DNA from: Thecamonas trahens ATCC 50062 | Taxonomy: Eukaryota; Protista; Apusomonadida | Direction: 5' to 3' | Length of the DNA stretch: 63,098 bases | Assembly: GCF_000142905.1 (NCBI RefSeq) | Contig: NW_013657619.1 | Location: 1-63,098 of the forward strand | Shown here: in pieces, positions 27,760-46,946 of the stretch | Numbering within the stretch: the stretch's first letter is position 1 | Layout of the letters: every line of letters starts with the position of its first letter | Made by a program: the position numbers and the translations under genes | Notes under the pieces: model-generated | What the model saw: only the letters and a program-made list of their open reading frames with translations | Told to the model about the DNA's origin: nothing | Database searches by the model: none

Positions 27760-28529
27760 CTCCAACCCACCACCTCCCCCCCCCCCCCTCCTCCTCCTCC
27801 TCGGGCACGTGACACCTTAGCGCGGTGNNNNNNNNNNNNNNNNNNNNNNNNNNNNNNNNNNNNNNNNNNNNNNNNNNNNNNNNNNNNNNNNNNNNNNNNN
27901 NNNNNNNNNNNNNNNNNNNNNNNNNNNNNNNNNNNNNNNNNNNNNNNNNNNNNNNNNNNNNNNNNNNNNNNNNNNNNNNNNNNNNNNNNNNNNNNNNNNN
28001 NNNNNNNNNNNNNNNNNNNNNNNNNNNNNNNNNNNNNNNNNNNNNNNNNNNNNNNNNNNNNNNNNNNNNNNNNNNNNNNNNNNNNNNNNNNNNNNNNNNN
28101 NNNNNNNNNNNNNNNNNNNNNNNNNNNNNNNNNNNNNNNNNNNNNNNNNNNNNNNNNNNNNNNNNNNNNNNNNNNNNNNNNNNNNNNNNNNNNNNNNNNN
28201 NNNNNNNNNNNNNNNNNNNNNNNNNNNNNNNNNNNNNNNNNNNNNNNNNNNNNNNNNNNNNNNNNNNNNNNNNNNNNNNNNNNNNNNNNNNNNNNNNNNN
28301 NNNNNNNNNNNNNNNNNNNNNNNNNNNNNNNNNNNNNNNNNNNNNNNNNNNNNNNNNNNNNNNNNNNNNNNNNNNNNNNNNNNNNNNNNNNNNNNNNNNN
28401 NNNNNNNNNNNNNNNNNNNNNNNNNNNNNNNNNNNNNNNNNNNNNNNNNNNNNNNNNNNNNNNNNNNNNNNNNNNNNNNNNNNNNNNNNNNNNNNNNNNN
28501 NNNNNNNNNNNNNNNNNNNNNNNNCACTA

Positions 28530-28693: not shown

Positions 28694-30713
28694 CGCGGTG
28701 CCCGACGAGGTGACCTCAGTGACGCAGTTTGATGCTGGGCTGGTGGTCGAGGCCATCTCGGTCGGATTGCACATGATGAACGAAGAACTGGCTTTCCCGA
28801 CTCAGTTGCCTCCGTCAATGTCGGCAAAGGTTCGCCTGTGCAACGCCATGGCAGAGGCCGTCAAGGAGCTCGGCTACCGCGGTGAGATTGGCTACGCCTC
28901 CATCATTTACACCCACGAGAAGGAGATCCGGGAACTGTTTGTCTGGCTCACCTCCCACATGCAGGAGGTTGGCGGCGTGGCGCCCGAGGCTGCACAGGCC
29001 GCGCCCGATCCGGGCTCGGACTCGCGGGCCCAGCTGATGAGGGCCGTCAAGTCGCGGGTCAACGCTCTTGTCAAGCGCGAGTCGTGGCGCTCGCCGCGGC
29101 TCCCGCGCCGGGCGTCGATGGTGCAGCGCGGCTCGGGAGCGACGTTTAAGGTTGCCACCGCGCGCCTCTACGCCCCGGGCCGGTACAAGGGCAAGAAGAA
29201 CGCCGCCGTCCTCCGCTACCTCCGCCGCTACCTGCCGCTGGTCACTCTCCAGCCGCCGGACACCATGGACGTGGCGCCGTCGATCATGGAGGACAATGTG
29301 ACGCAGGTCCTGCAAAAAGCTGACGTCGAGAACGAGTGGAACACCGCCGGCCTCGAGTCGGGCCTCACCCAGGCCCAGTACTGGGCGACCAAGAAGCAGG
29401 CGCTCATGTCCTCGTTTGCCTCGGACATCCACAAGGCGGTCCTCCTCAAGAAGCCCTCGCTCGAGTCCGAGTCCAAGGGCGCGCTCCGTGCCACCCACCA
29501 GTCGCTCTTTGTCCTCTCCTCCATGTTCAAGACTGGTAAGTCGAACCCGGCGCAGGCCGCCGTTGCCAAGGAGGCCGACGCCGAGCCGGTCGAGACCGAG
29601 GAGCAGGTCGCCGCCAAGCGCGCCGCCATCCTCTCGGACCTGCAGGCCGAGGAGGATGAGCTCTCGTACAACATCTCGGACGCAAACCGCCGTATTGCCG
29701 CTCTTGATGCCGAGCTGCACACGCTGCAGGAGCGGTTCAAGACTGAGGTGGCCAAGAAAAAGGAGCTCGAGGCTGCGTACATGTTTGAGAAGCGGGTCTT
29801 TGACGCCCTGGATGACCCCGAGCCAGCCATCGCCGAGCTCACCGCTAAGGTCGCCGCCATGCGCAAGGCGCTCGTCGAGCTGGCCGGGAAGTGGGAGCTC
29901 CGGCGCGCCCCGCTTGTGGCCAAGATCCGCGAGCTCAAGTCGGGCGAGGGTGACACCATGATCGAGATCAACGCGCTCATGGGCGCCATCCGCGACATCC
30001 GCGACGCCATGAAGGGCGTCATGGACGAGGGCCGCGAGCAGGAGGCCATCTACCAGGGCCTTCTCGCCGAGTACAAGGCCCTGCCCAAGGACATCACCCG
30101 CTCGCACTACACCAAGCGCATCCTCGACATTGTGGCACAAGTCCGCAAGCAAAAGGTCGACATCGACAAGGTTCTCATCGACACCCGCGCCCTCCAGCGC
30201 GACATCAACACCGTGACCGAGAAGCTCAAGCGCTCGTTTGCCATCACCGACGAGCTTATTTACGAGGACGCGCCTAACGACAAGGACGCCAAGGCCTCGT
30301 ACCGCGCCCTCGCCTCGCTTCACTCGCGCTTTGACGAGCTCATCGAGACAGTCCGCTCCATCGGCCATCTCGGCAACGAGATCCGCGACCTCGAGGCCAA
30401 GCACGCCAAGCTCGCCGACGCCAACGCCTCGCTCCAAGTCGATCGCCTCGAGGCCGACTATGAGGCCATTCGCTCCGAGAACAAGCAGCTAATTGCCCGC
30501 CTCAAGGCCATCGCCGAGGGCCTCGACGACCCAGGCGCCAACGCCGACGATGACGCCGATGCCGACGACGACGAGTACGACGACACCGACGCTGACTACG
30601 ACGAGGTGGAGTACGAGTACGAGGAGGTCGATGACGATGATCTCTTCGCCGCGGGCGACGATGCCGACGACGACGCTGACGATCCCGACGGGGACGACGA
30701 CAGCGACGAGTAG
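28694..30713 (+). CDS. CCDC22: Coiled-coil domain-containing protein 22 (CCC/Commander complex); 5' exon probably lies in the gap
   Basis: NN-CH region LP.SMSAK.R.C..MA.A.KELGY.GEIGY...Y, coiled coils, W...R.PL, R.HYT.RILDIV..VRKQK.DI.KVL.DTR.LQ.DIN....L.RSFA.TDELIY.DA, acidic tail. Acceptor TAG at 28691-28693. Confidence 0.92.
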
Positions 30714-30759: not shown

Positions 30760-32695
30760 CTACATAAAATCGAGGTCGTCCGCAAGCGCAGCGAGGTCGC
30801 TCTCGGAGAGCGCCGCCAGTGCGTCCTCAACCTCGACCTCGGACTTTGTCCGCGGCCGCGACTTCTTCTTGGCGGCGGCGGCGGCCTTCTTACGCTCGAC
30901 GGCGTCCCAGTCTTTGAGATCCTTGTCGCGGCCCTTGTACACGACGTAGTCGTTGCCAATCGTGGACTCGAGGGCTTCAACAATGAGGGCTTCGCGCAGC
31001 TTGTCGCGGTCGATCTTGGCCTTGGGCATCGCCTCGACCTGCTTGACCACCGACGGCTTGAGCGCCGGCTTCTGGCCCGAGAGCTCGAGCGCGAGCTCCG
31101 CGAGCTCTGCCTCGCTCAGTCCCTCGAGGATCTCCTCCTCCTCGCGGGTCAGGGGTGCGGCTGCAGCATCAATGGCAGCGGCGGCCTTCTTACCCTTCTT
31201 ACCCTTCTTGCCCTTCTTGCCGCTCTCCTCATTGGCGCTGCTCGCCGCGGCTTCCGCCGCAACCTTCTCCTTCTCGGCGCGGCGCTTGGCGGTAAACGAC
31301 TCGTCACTGCGCTTCTTGTACTCTTTCTTCTTGCGAGTCACGCCGCCTTTGGTCACCTTGACCGCGGCCTTTGGCTTCTCGGCCGCGGGCTCGGGAGCGT
31401 CGGCAGGCGCCTCGTCCTCGCCGCCGGTTGCAATGAGCTGCGAGATGTCCTCTGCGGCGTTCGGGTCGATGGCGCCGGCCTTGGCCTTGTCCTTCTTGGG
31501 CGTTTTCTTCCCCTTTTTGTCTTTCTTGGGCGTCTTGGACCCCTTCTTGCCGTTCTTGTTGTTCTTGTCGTTCTTGCCCTTCTTGCCCTTCTTGCCCTTC
31601 TTGCCCTTCTTGCCCTTCTTGGGCGTGTCGTCGGTAGCGTCGGCGGTGTCGGCAGCGGCGTCGGCAGCGGTCGAGGGCTCGGTCTCAGCCTCAGATGCAG
31701 GTTCGGGTGCGGGCGCGGCCTTGTCCTTCTTGGGTGTCTTGGACCCCTTTTTGTCGTTCTTGCCCTTCTTGCCCTTCTTGCTCTTCTTGCCCTTCTTGGG
31801 CGTGTCGTCGGCAGCGGCGTCGGCAGCGGTCGAGGGCTCGGTCTCAGCCTCAGATGCAGGTTCGGGTGCGGGCGCGGCCTTGTCCTTCTTGGGCGTCTTG
31901 GACCCCTTCTTGTCGTTCTTGCCCTTCTTGCCCTTCTTGCTCTTCTTGCCCTTCTTGGGCGTGTCGTCGGCGGTGGCGGTAGCGTCGGCGGTGTCGGCAG
32001 CGGCGTCGGCAGCGGCGTCGGCAGCGGTCTTGGCCTCGGCCACACCGACAGCTTCGGCCACACCCTCACCCTCACCCTCACCCTCAGCCAGAGCCACACC
32101 CTCGGCCCCGGCTACGGCTTCAGGATCAGGAGAAGCCTCACTATCAGCCTTGGACGAGTCTCCCACAGCCGTCACCGACGGACCGGCAGCAGCCTTCACC
32201 GCCTTGACCGGACCCGCCGTACCACTTGCGCCAACTACCACACCGCCCCCCCCCCCCCCCCCACCACACACACACCCATCCGCCCCAAGCCACACCATGA
32301 GTACCCGCGCATACCACCAGCAAGCCCGGACCGACCACCAACTGTGCCATGGGCTCATGGCTGCAAGCCATGTTCAGGTGCAGGGTCACACTGCGGGGGA
32401 GTCACACAGGCATGCGGCACGTACTCCAGGCAACAAGCAGAGAGTCGCCAGCAGCAATGCCGAGGTCCTTGGTCGTCTTGGTCATGTCCAGCAAGGAGGC
32501 ATGCTCAATGGGTGCGTCGGGCGAGGAGAGGCCGAAGAGACCGTACTTGGCCATGCGCTTGGTGCCCTTGAAGCCGACCTTTTTCAGCGTCCTCTCCTTA
32601 AGCTCATGCAATGGCAGCTTGTTGGTCACTTGCACCTCATCATGCACACTACGTTCGCCGTCCTTGGTCACAACAACAATGTTCAGCTTGGGCAT
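30760..32695 (-). CDS. Ubiquitin-like domain + Lys-rich repeats + C-terminal tropomodulin N-domain-like protein; join(32695..32425,32234..30760)
   Basis: GTACGT...TAG intron 32424-32235 joins the exons in frame (AW-I-GASG). C-terminal EEILEGLSEAELAELALEL..IDRDKLREAL..DYVVYKG..EVEDALAALSESDLAALADDL resembles the tropomodulin N-terminal half. Confidence 0.75.
31481..31975 (-). repeat. Coding tandem repeat, about 3 copies of about 160 bp, encoding DDTPKKGKK..GSKTPKKDKAAPAPEPASEAETEPSTAADAAA
   Basis: Near-identical nucleotide blocks repeated three times within the CDS. Confidence 0.9.
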
Positions 32696-32745: not shown

Positions 32746-32785
<40 letters not shown>

Positions 32786-32857
32786 GCGCTTTTTCGGGAG
32801 AAAAGTGCTTCGTTCACTGGCACGCTGACACGCCGGCTCGCTGGCACGCAGACAGGT

Positions 32858-33120
32858 CGATACGCCGACACAGCGACACGCAGACACAGCGACACGCAGA
32901 CACGCTGACACGAAGACTGGCCGATACGCAGACACGCTGACATGCCGATACGCAGACACGCTGACATGCCGATACGCAGATACACCGACACACAGACACA
33001 GCGACACGAAGACTGGCCGATACGCAGACACGCAGACATGCCGATACGCAGATACACCGATACACAGACACAACAATACACAGACACAACAATACACCGA
33101 TACGCCAATACGCCAATACA
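32858..33120. repeat. Compound intergenic minisatellite (CCGATACGCAGACACGCTGACATG-like units)
   Basis: Reiterated GATACGCAGACAC / GACACAGCGACACG motifs, preceded by (CT)n at about 32750-32780. Confidence 0.75.
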
Positions 33121-33222: not shown

Positions 33223-35222
33223 TTAGCTCTGCGGCGTGAAGACGTGGACGGTTCCAGAGTCCGATGCAACGTACAGCGCGGCGGCCTTGGGCGCAAAGAC
33301 GACTGCGGTAGCCGCGCCCTCGGGTGAGTTGAGGGTGACGATCGCCGCCGGAGACTGCTCCGGTGCGTCGTCGCCGTCGTCAGCGGCAGGATCCATGCTG
33401 CCGTAGATGGCCACCTGCTCGCCCACGCCCACCGCAAGGTACGTTCCGGTGGCGTCAAAGCCGAGCGCCGAGACCGGCGCCGAGTGGCGGAGGACGCGGA
33501 AGACCTGCTGGTTGCGCAGGTCAAAGGCACAGACCGTGCCGTCGGCAAAGCCGCCGGCAACCACGTACCCGATCTCCGAGAACGCCACGTGGGTGCAGCT
33601 GCCGGCGCCCGCAGGTGCCGCCAGCTCGGCAATCCGGGCCATCGTCTGCAGCGACCAGATCTCAACACATCCAGCCTCGGAGGCCGCACCAAGGATGAGC
33701 CCGTCTGGGTGAAAGGCGACCGCGTGGAGCGGCGCCGTGTTGCCGCCGCGCGCCTCGGCGCCCTTCTGCGTCACCACAGCGCCGTCGCTCGCCGAGTACA
33801 GCGCCAGCGTCCCGTCGTCCGAGCTCGTCACGTACAGCTTGCCGGTGTGGTGGACGTCGACGCCGGTCACCGCTCCATTGTGCACCTTGTTGTGCAAATG
33901 GGTCTTGTGGTAGCTCCCGCTTTCATCGCGGGTCCACATCCGCGCGCTCCCGTCGCTCGACGCCGTGTACACAACGCTTGCCCCGTCGGCCACCGCCGCC
34001 GCCGCCGTCACACGCCCCTTGTGCCCGCGCAGCGTCGCCACCACACTCCCGTCCACCGCCGATGCAATCTTGACCACTCCGTGGCCTGAGCCGACCACAA
34101 GCGTCTGTCCGTGACTCGCCACGTGCTCACCCGCAGCCACGCCCGCGGCCACCGGCACCGCCACCGAGATCCCGCCCTTGTCTGCAGGGAAGACGTGGGT
34201 GAGCGGCACCTCATCTGCCGCCGCAAACTCAGCCACCATCGACGTCGTAGCCATGTCCGGCGGTGGCACTGCCTTCTTCCGCAGCTTGCGCACCGCCTTG
34301 CCCGCCTTGCTCAACGCCTTGAACTCGGCCGGCGAGAAGACATCCGCCGGGCCGTCGCCTGCTGCTGGAGCTGCAGCAGCCGCCGAAGGAGCCGGAGCTG
34401 CCTCGCCAGCCACGTCCATTGCCGCCACGCCCGAGTCCGTCCCGTTGCCCGCAGCTCCACCGCTGGTGGCAGGCGTCGGGAGCGAGGCCGGAATCGACTT
34501 GTTGAGGGCCGTCAGTGCGGCGCGGGCCTCATCGCGCTCGCGCACCAGGCGGGCAATGACCCGAGCAGCTGCGTCGTTCTTGTACAGGGCATGAGCCAGC
34601 TCCTGGCGGGTGGCCAGCAGTGCTTGCTTGACCTGGAACGACTCGAGCATGACCGCGTCCCACTCTGCCTGAAAGGCAGCGAGCATGCCCGGGATGGAGT
34701 TGGCTGAGGGCGGGCGGGGCGCCGCAAAGGCCGTCTTTGGTGCCACCACCTCGATCAGCTGATCCATGCCCAGCGGATTGCCGGTGTGCGGACAGCGTCC
34801 GTCGCTCTCCAGATGCTGCCCAATGAGCCGCTTCTCGTACACATACCCCGTAGCCGGGTCCACCACAGGCTCCTTAGCCACCGTGTTCGACACTGCATAC
34901 CAAAGAAGGGAAGGAATGAGTGAGTGACCAGTATGTATGCTGTCGTAAGGGGGGAGGGGAGGGGGGGGAAGGGGAGGAGGTGCTGGTACTGGCTGGCCCT
35001 TTGCCCGGCTGGCTGGCCGGGGATTAGCTGCTTGCGTTGGTACGAGGTCGCTGGCCGGAGGGGGGGGGGGGGGGGGGGGGGGATGGGCTGCTTAGCACCA
35101 GCTAGACCAGACACATGACCTTCCGCACAAGCACACAAGCACACAAACTCACTCACTCACTCGTGTGTGTGTTCATATGGGTGTGGCTGGGGCGAGTGTG
35201 GGTACGTACGGGAGCAGAACAT
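33223..35222 (-). CDS. PRPF19: Pre-mRNA-processing factor 19 (U-box, coiled coil, WD40); join(35222..35210,34892..33223)
   Basis: Spliced MFCSLSNTVAKEPVV..GYVYEKRLI (intron 35209-34893 GTACGT...CAG), PRPPSANSIPGML..FQ.EWDAVMLE.F..RQELAHALY..DAA.RVIARL, FHPDGLIL, WD40 repeats. Confidence 0.96.
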
Positions 35223-43883: not shown

Positions 43884-44868
43884 GGCGAGTGTGACCGGAA
43901 GAGGAGGAGGGGGGGGAGGGGGGGGGGTGGGGGGGGAGGGGGTAGGGGGTAGGGGTAGTAGTACGGGTTACGGAACGNNNNNNNNNNNNNNNNNNNNNNN
44001 NNNNNNNNNNNNNNNNNNNNNNNNNNNNNNNNNNNNNNNNNNNNNNNNNNNNNNNNNNNNNNNNNNNNNNNNNNNNNNNNNNNNNNNNNNNNNNNNNNNN
44101 NNNNNNNNNNNNNNNNNNNNNNNNNNNNNNNNNNNNNNNNNNNNNNNNNNNNNNNNNNNNNNNNNNNNNNNNNNNNNNNNNNNNNNNNNNNNNNNNNNNN
44201 NNNNNNNNNNNNNNNNNNNNNNNNNNNNNNNNNNNNNNNNNNNNNNNNNNNNNNNNNNNNNNNNNNNNNNNNNNNNNNNNNNNNNNNNNNNNNNNNNNNN
44301 NNNNNNNNNNNNNNNNNNNNNNNNNNNNNNNNNNNNNNNNNNNNNNNNNNNNNNNNNNNNNNNNNNNNNNNNNNNNNNNNNNNNNNNNNNNNNNNNNNNN
44401 NNNNNNNNNNNNNNNNNNNNNNNNNNNNNNNNNNNNNNNNNNNNNNNNNNNNNNNNNNNNNNNNNNNNNNNNNNNNNNNNNNNNNNNNNNNNNNNNNNNN
44501 NNNNNNNNNNNNNNNNNNNNNNNNNNNNNNNNNNNNNNNNNNNNNNNNNNNNNNNNNNNNNNNNNNNNNNNNNNNNNNNNNNNNNNNNNNNNNNNNNNNN
44601 NNNNNNNNNNNNNNNNNNNNNNNNNNNNNNNNNNNNNNNNNNNNNNNNNNNNNNNNNNNNNNNNNNNNNNNNNNNNNNNNNNNNNNNNNNNNNNNNNNNN
44701 NNNNNNNNNNNNNNNNNNNNNNNNNNNNNNNNNNNNNNNNNNNNNNNNNNNNNNNNNNNNNNNNNNNNNNNNNNNNNNNNNNNNNNNNAAGGGGGGAAGG
44801 GTATTGGTTACGGTTACCAACGGGGACAGCTACGAGTATTGCTACTGCAGGAAGGTTGACGGTATGTG

Positions 44869-46068: not shown

Positions 46069-46946
46069 NNNNNNNNNNNNNNNNNNNNNNNNNNNNNNNN
46101 NNNNNNNNNNNNNNNNNNNNNNNNNNNNNNNNNNNNNNNNNNNNNNNNNNNNNNNNNNNNNNNNNNNNNNNNNNNNNNNNNNNNNNNNNNNNNNNNNNNN
46201 NNNNNNNNNNNNNNNNNNNNNNNNNNNNNNNNNNNNNNNNNNNNNNNNNNNNNNNNNNNNNNNNNNNNNNNNNNNNNNNNNNNNNNNNNNNNNNNNNNNN
46301 NNNNNNNNNNNNNNNNNNNNNNNNNNNNNNNNNNNNNNNNNNNNNNNNNNNNNNNNNNNNNNNNNNNNNNNNNNNNNNNNNNNNNNNNNNNNNNNNNNNN
46401 NNNNNNNNNNNNNNNNNNNNNNNNNNNNNNNNNNNNNNNNNNNNNNNNNNNNNNNNNNNNNNNNNNNNNNNNNNNNNNNNNNNNNNNNNNNNNNNNNNNN
46501 NNNNNNNNNNNNNNNNNNNNNNNNNNNNNNNNNNNNNNNNNNNNNNNNNNNNNNNNNNNNNNNNNNNNNNNNNNNNNNNNNNNNNNNNNNNNNNNNNNNN
46601 NNNNNNNNNNNNNNNNNNNNNNNNNNNNNNNNNNNNNNNNNNNNNNNNNNNNNNNNNNNNNNNNNNNNNNNNNNNNNNNNNNNNNNNNNNNNNNNNNNNN
46701 NNNNNNNNNNNNNNNNNNNNNNNNNNNNNNNNNNNNNNNNNNNNNNNNNNNNNNNNNNNNNNNNNNNNNNNNNNNNNNNNNNNNNNNNNNNNNNNNNNNN
46801 NNNNNNNNNNNNNNNNNNNNNNNNNNNNNNNNNNNNNNNNNNNNNNNNNNNNNNNNNNNNNNNNNNNNNNNNCGGTCGCCAGCGGCCCGGCCGCCTCATC
46901 CAAGCGCCGCAAGCGGGCGTAGCGACATGCATTGCTGTCGCTCCCT

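What the first reader, a model, noticed from the sequence alone, without database searches (positions are those of the whole stretch)
30760..32695. Tropomodulin N-terminal domain at the C-terminus of a ubiquitin-like/Lys-rich protein, without the LRR
Seen: the last ~130 aa (EEILEGLSEAELAELALEL...KQVEAMPKAKIDRDKLREAL..EA...DYVVYKG...EVEDALAALSESDLAALADDL) align by eye with the tropomodulin N-half (DEILGALTEEEL..L...FKREELLDHL...DLVPYTG...ELEEALANASDAELCDIAAILG). Established: that half holds two tropomyosin-binding sites and an actin-capping site, and in animal Tmod/Lmod it is N-terminal and followed by an LRR. Here it follows a spliced ubiquitin/FERM-F0-like domain and basic repeats. Inference: a pre-metazoan pointed-end/tropomyosin-binding module in a new architecture.
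Basis: partly seen in the sequence, partly recalled or inferred. Interest (0 to 1): 0.8.

Follow-up and report, generated by a model that had tools for sequence, protein, structure and literature searches.

The report
Split tropomodulin in a protist
A single-celled eukaryote carries the tropomyosin- and actin-binding front half of the animal filament-capping protein tropomodulin at the tail of a ubiquitin-like protein, and the back (leucine-rich-repeat) half as a separate small gene, so the two working halves of this cap occur naturally apart.

Summary
The last ~125 aa of the minus-strand gene at 30760-32695 match Pfam Tropomodulin (PF03250) above the curated cut-off: 33.4 bits against 23.3, profile positions 12-132 of 142. 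It is the only such hit in the 28.7-Mb genome. The only PDB sequences that ring are Tropomodulin-1, aligned in register over residues 14-132.

The two-exon model is supported by the one relative found among 1.84 billion representatives, P0002. It is an intronless 326-aa protein with the same layout (ubiquitin-like N-terminus, linker, Tmod-N-like C-terminus), and it passes PF03250 on its own.

New here: the missing LRR (ABS2) is not lost. It is a separate 197-aa gene on another contig (G000:C27), with Leiomodin-2 at E 2.7e-27 and Tropomodulin-1 at E 4e-20. It is conserved as a stand-alone protein in marine relatives. Together the two genes cover Tmod1 ~14-138 and 189-343. The genome also encodes short tropomyosins.

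Best reading: a naturally split tropomodulin. Binding to tropomyosin and actin is inferred, not shown. "FERM-F0-like" is not supported beyond a generic beta-grasp fold, and the organism, hence "pre-metazoan", was not determined.

The scan had noted the Lys-rich repeat of this gene (s1-760208) and the LRR gene (s1-748709) separately.

The parts
32425..32695 (-). Exon 1 (271 nt, ends in phase 1): 90-aa N-terminal ubiquitin-like (beta-grasp) domain, ATG at 32695-32693
   Evidence: 36% identity, E 3e-14, to residues 1-83 of the orthologue P0002; the homology ends at the same Trp, where the donor lies. AF2 topology is beta-beta-alpha-beta..beta, pLDDT 66.6. Foldseek hits are Ubl/SUMO/UBX/RBD folds, TMq 0.5-0.64. 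Only sub-threshold Pfam hits: Rad60-SLD, Ras_bdg_2.
32235..32424 (-). Intron, 190 nt, GTACGT...TAG
   Evidence: Canonical GT-AG. The only reading that joins the exon 1 frame (phase 1) to the long downstream ORF. Without splicing, exon 1 runs into a stop at 32402-32404. The orthologue P0002 is one uninterrupted ORF holding both domains.
30760..32234 (-). Exon 2 (1475 nt including stop): acidic/Ala-rich stretch, Lys-rich repeats, Tmod-N-like module; whole protein about 581 aa
   Evidence: Open frame listed; coordinates computed.
31481..31978 (-). Charge-blocked tandem repeats (about 53 aa, KKGKK runs and acidic/Ala blocks), with seven TPKK (CDK-type) motifs; pI about 10
   Evidence: TRF period 159 nt, 2.5 copies, 91% matches. 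Composition and motif count. Not conserved in P0002.
31066..31143 (-). TMBS1-like amphipathic helix (aligns with Tmod1 14-39; a Leu at the position of Tmod1 L27)
   Evidence: Alignment; predicted helices at residues 19-40 of the 146-aa segment; conserved in P0002.
30907..31017 (-). ABS1-like segment (aligns with Tmod1 61-96; equivalents of L71, Y87, G89 and W96 kept)
   Evidence: Alignment; predicted helix at 65-81. The helix and the 'ALEST.G.DYV' core are conserved in P0002, which lacks the Trp-containing extension.
30763..30852 (-). TMBS2-like helix pair (aligns with Tmod1 109-138; a Leu at the position of Tmod1 I131); the protein ends here
   Evidence: Alignment; helices at 119-145 with the highest pLDDT of the model. 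The 'RPRTKSE....DALA' block is invariant between the window and P0002, and both proteins stop at the same point.

Best explanation
The locus is a real two-exon gene for a mostly disordered protein of about 581 aa. It has an N-terminal ubiquitin-like (beta-grasp) domain, a long charged linker with recently triplicated Lys-rich TPKK repeats, and a C-terminal module of about 125 aa. That module is homologous to the N-terminal half of tropomodulin, with the same order of elements: TMBS1, ABS1, TMBS2. The other half of tropomodulin, the LRR actin-binding domain ABS2, is encoded by a separate 197-aa gene on another contig. The organism therefore has a naturally split tropomodulin. Inferred mechanism: the two amphipathic helices (TMBS1 and TMBS2) each bind the N-terminal end of one of the organism's short tropomyosins at the filament pointed end, and ABS1 lies on the terminal actin subunit. 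This would give tropomyosin-dependent pointed-end binding or capping. The free LRR protein would supply the tropomyosin-independent contact with the next subunits, either on its own or alongside. The ubiquitin-like domain and the basic linker would tether or regulate this module, for example through a GTPase or other partner, acidic surfaces, or CDK phosphorylation. Shown here: gene structure, domain homology, conservation of the architecture in a second species, the separate LRR gene and the presence of tropomyosins. Inferred: all binding and capping activity, and any cooperation between the two gene products.
For: PF03250 hit at 33.4 bits against a cut-off of 23.3, over profile positions 12-132 of 142. 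It is the only hit in the 28.7-Mb genome in six frames, with none in the controls. Only Tmod1 is found in the PDB, in register. The equivalents of the functionally mapped Tmod1 residues L27, L71 and I131, and of the Y-x-G...W motif of ABS1, are hydrophobic or identical in that alignment. AF2 gives no globular fold but helices at the three expected places, as described for the unstructured Tmod N-terminal region of about 160 aa (PMC4571291). The orthologue P0002 (326 aa, one ORF) has the same domain order, 36% and 42-48% identity in the two end domains, no similarity in the linker, and its own PF03250 hit of 24.8 bits. The stand-alone LRR gene at G000:C27:278655-279348 matches Lmod2 4rwt at E 2.7e-27 and Tmod1 1io0 at E 4e-20, over Tmod1 189-343. 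Its orthologues P0003 to P0006 carry the precomputed Pfam family PF27087 LRR_TMOD-LMOD; P0005 is a complete 194-aa ORF on four marine contigs. There is one N-half gene and one LRR gene in the genome. Two short tropomyosin genes are present, PF00261 at 42.8 and 37.1 bits.
Against: Pairwise similarity to Tmod1 is weak (E about 1), so homology rests on the Pfam profile. The matched elements are E/L/A-rich amphipathic helices, which are prone to compositional matches. The family has only two known members, so conservation statistics are thin. P0002 lacks the Trp-containing extension of ABS1. In vertebrate cells Tmod1 N-half and ABS2 expressed separately lose sharp pointed-end localisation (PMC4571291), so separate halves may cap poorly or do something else. 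There are no expression, localisation or binding data. The Lys-rich TPKK repeats look like histone-H1-type tails and could point to another compartment.
Confidence: 0.6

Rival explanations
1. Resemblance without homology or shared function. The C-terminus is a set of acidic amphipathic helices of the 'LSxxEL..L' type that score against PF03250 by composition and periodicity. It binds some other coiled-coil or basic partner unrelated to tropomyosin or actin.
For: Pairwise E-values to Tmod1 are only about 1 and 0.23. No metazoan Tmod reached E <= 0.001 in the 1.84-billion-protein phmmer search. The region is low in complexity and predicted without a fold.
Against: The Pfam score is 10 bits above the curated cut-off after HMMER's bias correction, and spans 120 profile positions in order, including the non-helical ABS1 core. 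A GC-rich 28.7-Mb genome full of Ala/Glu/Leu-rich frames gives no second hit even at E <= 1. The orthologue passes the cut-off independently. Tmod1 is the only PDB sequence found, twice. The same genome keeps the matching LRR half and tropomyosins.
Confidence: 0.15
2. A chromatin or nucleolar protein. The H1-like TPKK/KKGKK repeats bind nucleic acid, the ubiquitin-like domain acts as a SUMO-like interaction module, and the Tmod-like tail is a co-opted acidic interaction motif.
For: Seven TPKK motifs and a 180-aa block of pI about 10. The weak Pfam hint for exon 1 is Rad60 SUMO-like domain, E 0.08, below cut-off. SUMO structures are among the top Foldseek matches.
Against: The basic repeats are a recent tandem expansion (91% identical copies) and are absent from the orthologue P0002. 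Its linker is Ala/Gly/Pro-rich, so they are not what the family conserves. The conserved parts are the two end domains.
Confidence: 0.1
3. Two independent genes, not one: a 97-aa ubiquitin-like protein (32402-32695) and a separate downstream Lys-rich/Tmod-like protein. The proposed intron would not be removed.
For: No transcript evidence was available. The acceptor is preceded by a G-rich rather than a pyrimidine-rich tract. The unspliced exon 1 frame closes after seven more codons.
Against: P0002 carries both domains in one uninterrupted 981-nt ORF. Homology of exon 1 to P0002 stops at the Trp immediately before the GTACGT donor, and a 'GAS' motif follows in both proteins. The downstream ORF's own ATG lies inside the putative intron and would add about 40 aa of non-conserved Trp/Gly/Cys-rich sequence.
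Confidence: 0.05

Closest known systems
Tropomodulins (Tmod1-4), N-terminal region with TMBS1-ABS1-TMBS2 (Pfam PF03250)
   Same: All three elements are present in the same order and spacing, aligning with Tmod1 14-138. Hydrophobic residues sit at the positions of L27, L71 and I131, and the Y-x-G...W motif of ABS1 is kept. The region is predicted disordered with three helical segments. Tropomyosins are present in the same genome.
   Different: The module sits at the C-terminus of a protein of about 581 aa, not at the N-terminus. It is preceded by a ubiquitin-like domain and a charged repeat linker. No LRR/ABS2 follows, and the polypeptide ends after TMBS2. The first ~13 residues of Tmod TMBS1 are not matched. 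Sequence similarity is detectable only at profile level.
Tmod/Lmod LRR domain, ABS2 (PF27087 LRR_TMOD-LMOD; PDB 1io0, 4pki, 4rwt)
   Same: The separate gene on G000:C27 aligns over the whole LRR cap including the C-terminal helix (Tmod1 189-343, Lmod2 184-338), E 1e-19 to 1e-27.
   Different: It stands alone at 197 aa, with a short N-terminal extension of about 39 aa and no TMBS/ABS1 region, no Lmod-type proline-rich extension and no WH2 domain. It lies on a different contig from the N-half gene.
Leiomodins (Lmod1-3)
   Same: They share TMBS1 and the LRR fold. The C27 LRR protein scores slightly better against Lmod2 than against Tmod1.
   Different: Lmods have lost ABS1 and TMBS2 (PMC4571291), whereas the window protein keeps matches to both. 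There is no WH2 domain here.
Laboratory Tmod1 half-molecules (N-terminal fragment and ABS2 fragment)
   Same: The natural break between the two genes falls in the same TMBS2-ABS2 linker where experimenters cut Tmod1 into an N-terminal fragment and an ABS2 fragment (the Tmod1N and Tmod1ABS2 constructs of PMC4571291).
   Different: These are engineered fragments of one gene. Here the halves are separate, conserved genes, and the N-half is fused to other domains.

Membership tests
Tropomodulin N-terminal region (Pfam PF03250) | Profile match above the curated gathering score | tested here: met
   33.4 bits (domain alone) and 28.5 bits (ORF) against 23.3. Orthologue P0002 gives 24.8 bits. It is the only hit in the genome.
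Tropomodulin N-terminal region (Pfam PF03250) | TMBS1, ABS1 and TMBS2 present in that order, with the key hydrophobic positions (Tmod1 L27, L71, I131) | tested here: met
   In-register alignment to Tmod1 14-132 with Leu at all three positions and Y/G/W of ABS1 kept. Helices are predicted at the three sites. The functional importance of these residues is from the Tmod literature (own knowledge), not tested here.
Tropomodulin/Leiomodin family (full-length architecture) | The N-terminal TM/actin-binding region is followed in the same polypeptide by the LRR domain (ABS2) | tested here: not met
   The stop codon at 30760-30762 follows TMBS2 directly, and a convergent CCDC22 gene ends 46 bp further on. 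P0002 ends at the same point. The LRR is encoded on contig C27.
Tropomodulin/Leiomodin family (full-length architecture) | The Tmod region lies at the N-terminus of the protein | tested here: not met
   It occupies the last ~125 of ~581 residues here and the last ~130 of 326 in P0002.
Tropomodulin/Leiomodin family (function) | Binds tropomyosin N-termini and caps or binds actin pointed ends | not testable with these tools
   Only the presence of candidate ligands was checked: two short tropomyosin genes.
LRR_TMOD-LMOD (PF27087), for the companion gene on G000:C27 | Sequence match over the whole Tmod/Lmod LRR cap | tested here: met
   phmmer against PDB: Lmod2 E 2.7e-27, Lmod1 ABS2 2.4e-23, Tmod1 4e-20, over 155 residues. 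Orthologues carry precomputed PF27087. The family is not in the local Pfam copy, so it could not be scanned directly.
Ubiquitin-like (beta-grasp) fold, for exon 1 | beta-beta-alpha-beta-beta topology and structural match to Ubl domains | tested here: met
   AF2 model with pLDDT 66.6. Foldseek against PDB gives 5 hits at E <= 1e-3, all Ubl/SUMO/UBX, TMq up to 0.64. The model confidence is only moderate.
   Talin F0 (2kc1) appears at rank 43 and TMq 0.59, no better than SUMO, NEDD8, TBCE-Ubl or Raf-RBD. There is no Pfam FERM hit.

The most novel reading that the evidence does not exclude
The two genes preserve the pre-fusion state of tropomodulin. In an ancestor at or below the base of the opisthokonts, a tropomyosin/actin-binding tail on a ubiquitin-like adaptor and a free LRR actin-binder worked together at pointed ends. 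The animal Tmod/Lmod family arose when the two were fused into one chain (a 'Rosetta stone' pair). The protist pair would then be a natural two-component pointed-end cap whose assembly can be regulated through the ubiquitin-like domain and the CDK-type sites of the linker.
Probability: 0.25. Interest if true: 0.8.

Novelty: new variant of a known kind. Interest (0 to 1): 0.6.

Why it matters
Tropomodulin is the classic pointed-end cap of actin filaments. It is treated as an animal protein whose four alternating tropomyosin- and actin-binding sites must sit in one chain to work. I found no paper in the held library that discusses tropomodulin in unicellular relatives of animals.

A protist that keeps the N-terminal (tropomyosin-dependent) and LRR (tropomyosin-independent) halves as separate, conserved genes, next to short tropomyosins, gives two things:
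- A testable scenario for how the cap was assembled, by gene fusion or by lineage-specific fission.
- A natural experiment on what each half does alone, and on whether they cooperate in trans.

It also shows that tropomyosin-linked pointed-end regulation may predate muscle and animals. The ubiquitin-like head and phosphorylatable linker suggest a mode of regulation not known for animal Tmods.

Tried and rejected
- Word-indexed protein searches found only P0002 itself and no Tmod-N relative, apparently because low-complexity words filled the 8000-candidate limit. These used the C-terminal region of the ORF and P0002.
- Two scans of JGI metagenome contigs, with the window domain and with P0002, found nothing.
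- In the big HMMER search, P0001 is a spurious hit: a bacterial-type repeat protein matching a 30-residue stretch seven times. It was discarded.
- No exact-product record exists for the 532-aa ORF.
- ESM Atlas was unavailable at every try.
- PF27087 could not be used for a genome scan because it is not in the local library. The LRR gene was found instead via LRR_6 hits with short open frames.
- The low-GC stretches in the first composition profile, which looked like AT-rich islands, are runs of N.
- Literature searches for tropomodulin in choanoflagellates, filastereans, apusomonads, fungi or Dictyostelium returned no paper holding both terms. The 2012 and 2013 Tmod reviews are not held.
- Metazoan Tmod sequences could not be obtained as referenced ids, so no hhalign profile-profile test or LRR phylogeny was run.
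Every search was done exon by exon, by reference.

Full report
**1. What is at the coordinates**

On the minus strand an ATG at 32695 opens a 90-codon frame. Unspliced, it closes at 32402. A canonical GTACGT donor follows codon 90 at 32424. A TAG acceptor at 32235 joins the frame, in phase 1, to the long ORF that runs to the stop at 30760-30762.

Every search was done exon by exon, by reference.

The neighbours are ordinary eukaryotic genes:
- A CCDC22 homologue at 28698-30713 on the plus strand (PF05667, E 6e-100). It converges on this gene with 46 bp between the stop codons.
- A Prp19 homologue at 33223-34893 on the minus strand.

The genome (G000) is 28.7 Mb in 131 contigs and about 63% G+C.

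**2. Is the tropomodulin resemblance real?**

Yes, at profile level.
- The last 146 aa score 33.4 bits (E 5e-08) against Pfam PF03250, whose curated cut-off is 23.3. The match covers profile positions 12-132 of 142 in one stretch.
- A six-frame scan of the whole genome with the same profile finds this site alone, even at E <= 1. Fourteen control genomes give nothing. This is a useful empirical control, because the genome is full of Ala/Glu/Leu-rich frames.
- phmmer against all distinct PDB sequences returns only Tropomodulin-1. The E-value is about 1, but the alignment runs in register from Tmod1 residue 14 to 132.
- A profile of the window sequence plus its orthologue again returns only Tmod1, at E 0.23.

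In the alignment a Leu sits at the positions of Tmod1 L27 (TMBS1), L71 (ABS1) and I131 (TMBS2). The Y-x-G...W motif of ABS1 is also kept. That these positions matter for function is my own knowledge of the Tmod literature.

AlphaFold2 gives no globular fold (pTM 0.21). It predicts helices at residues 19-40, 65-81 and 119-145 of the segment. This matches the description of the Tmod N-terminal ~160 aa as unstructured, with helical segments in TMBS1, ABS1 and TMBS2 (PMC4571291).

**3. Relatives, and support for the splice**

The exhaustive HMMER search of 1.84 billion representatives gave two hits. P0001 is a spurious repeat protein. P0002 is a 326-aa protein encoded by one uninterrupted ORF on a 5.4-kb contig assembled from run SRR30952584.

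P0002 has the same layout as the window gene:
- Residues 1-83 match exon 1 at 36% identity, E 3e-14. The match ends at the same Trp that precedes the donor in the window.
- Its last ~130 residues match the Tmod-like module at 42-48% identity.
- The linker between the two domains shows no similarity.
- It passes PF03250 on its own, at 24.8 bits.
- Both proteins stop at the same point, just after the TMBS2-like helix.

So the two end domains are the conserved parts, and one polypeptide carries both. In G000 the gene is single-copy. No further members were found by word search or in metagenome contigs. The family is therefore rare in current data.

**4. The other parts of the protein**

*Exon 1.* It folds, with moderate confidence (pLDDT 66.6), as beta-beta-alpha-beta..beta. 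It matches ubiquitin-like folds in the PDB: a bacterial Ubl, SUMO, UBX, NEDD8, TBCE-Ubl, Raf-RBD, talin F0 and the COBLL1 Ubl, at TMq 0.5-0.64. Nothing singles out FERM F0. Pfam gives only sub-threshold hints.

*The linker.* It holds an acidic/Ala-rich stretch and then about 2.5 copies of a 159-nt unit at 91% identity. These encode KKGKK runs and seven TPKK motifs, with pI about 10. The repeats are recent and are absent from P0002, so they are a lineage-specific elaboration.

**5. The LRR is not missing from the organism**

An earlier scan note (s1-748709) mentioned a minimal tropomodulin LRR elsewhere in this genome, without coordinates. I located it independently among LRR_6 hits with short open frames.

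- Location and structure: G000:C27, minus strand. Exon 1 is 279232-279348, the intron (100 nt, GTATGT..CAG) is 279132-279231, and exon 2 is 278655-279131. The product is 197 aa.
- Matches over the entire LRR cap (Tmod1 189-343): Leiomodin-2 (4rwt) at E 2.7e-27, Lmod1 ABS2 at 2.4e-23 and Tmod1 (1io0) at 4e-20.
- Orthologues P0003 (99% identity), P0004, P0005 (78%) and P0006 all carry the precomputed Pfam family PF27087 LRR_TMOD-LMOD.
- P0005 is a complete 194-aa ORF on four short marine-sample contigs. It starts with the same N-terminal motif as my spliced model.
- No paralogue with a Tmod N-terminal region exists in G000.

The two genes therefore cover Tmod1 from about residue 14 to 138 and, by direct alignment, from 189 to 343. 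The LRR protein's 39-residue N-terminal extension would carry that back to about residue 150, but this part is extrapolated rather than aligned. The break falls in the TMBS2-ABS2 linker, the same boundary experimenters use to cut Tmod into halves.

**6. Ligands and lineage**

The genome has at least two short, intron-containing tropomyosin genes, on C24 and C17. They give PF00261 scores of 42.8 and 37.1 bits (the cut-off is 38.6, so only the C24 fragment clears it) and have fungal/animal-like N-termini.

Integrin beta is present (E 8.5e-41). Runt and T-box domains were not detected. Other readers noted talin, RSU1 and SF-assemblin.

This pattern and the marine relatives would fit an apusomonad-like or other deep obazoan flagellate. 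I did not identify the organism, so 'pre-metazoan' remains an inference.

**7. Mechanism**

*Shown:*
- A conserved gene combining a Ubl domain with a Tmod N-half homologue.
- A separate, conserved Tmod/Lmod-type LRR gene.
- Tropomyosins in the same genome.

*Inferred:*
- TMBS1 and TMBS2 bind the N-terminal ends of the two tropomyosin strands at the pointed end, and ABS1 covers the terminal actin subunit.
- The free LRR protein binds at the interface of the first three subunits, as ABS2 does in Tmod (PMC4571291).
- The Ubl domain and the phosphorylatable basic linker localise or regulate the module.

*Caveat:* in cardiomyocytes the isolated Tmod1 N-region and the isolated ABS2 each lose sharp pointed-end localisation (PMC4571291). 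The split pair may therefore cap weakly, need each other in trans, or act as tropomyosin-end and filament-side binders rather than as a true cap.

**8. Comparison and novelty**

The C-terminal module meets the sequence definition of the Tmod N-terminal region. It fails the architectural definition of the Tmod/Lmod family, because there is no LRR in cis and the module is not N-terminal. I therefore file it as a homologous module in a new architecture, not as a tropomodulin.

I found no paper in the held library that discusses tropomodulin in unicellular lineages. That is absence in a limited library, not proof of novelty.

Whether the split is ancestral (fusion later produced Tmod) or derived (fission here) could not be tested.

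**9. Verdict**

- It is a new variant of a known kind.
- Interest is 0.6.

Noticed in passing
G000:C27:278655-279348 (loci L010, L018), minus strand: Stand-alone two-exon gene for a 197-aa Tmod/Lmod-type LRR cap (ABS2). PDB matches: Lmod2 E 2.7e-27, Tmod1 E 4e-20. Orthologues P0003 to P0006 occur as stand-alone proteins in marine samples. It is the companion half of the window gene.
   Followed up: yes
G000:C24:261908-262942 (L003) and G000:C17:114503-115217 (L007): Two short tropomyosin genes, each with one intron after a conserved N-terminal exon of about 28 aa beginning MEKVR. They end in the same C-terminal motif. They are candidate ligands of the Tmod-like module.
   Followed up: partly
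window 32749-33113: The intergenic region between the Prp19 stop and the ATG of this gene is almost entirely repeats: a (CT)16 run at 32749-32781 and a degenerate 16/24/48/96-nt tandem array at 32821-33113. Function unknown; possibly promoter or 5'UTR.
   Followed up: no
window 27828-28524, 43978-44788, 46069-46872 and four shorter runs: Runs of N (assembly gaps or withheld sequence). They cause the apparent low-GC islands in coarse composition profiles. The gap at 27828-28524 lies just upstream of the CCDC22 ORF and may hide its true 5' end.
   Followed up: partly
window 28698-30713 (+) and 33223-34893 (-): Clear CCDC22 (Commander complex) and Prp19 homologues flank the gene. The CCDC22 stop lies 46 bp from this gene's stop, so the 3' UTRs of the convergent genes must overlap or be very short. 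CCDC22 has an Asp/Glu-rich acidic tail.
   Followed up: no
G000:C30:55564-56313: A single integrin beta gene (PF00362, E 8.5e-41) in a genome where Runt and T-box domains were not detected. This is useful for placing the organism.
   Followed up: no
P0002 contig (Logan SRR30952584, 5359 nt): In the orthologue's contig the downstream convergent neighbour is a 634-aa product cut by the contig end. That is the position CCDC22 holds in the window, so synteny is possible. No DNA was available to check.
   Followed up: no
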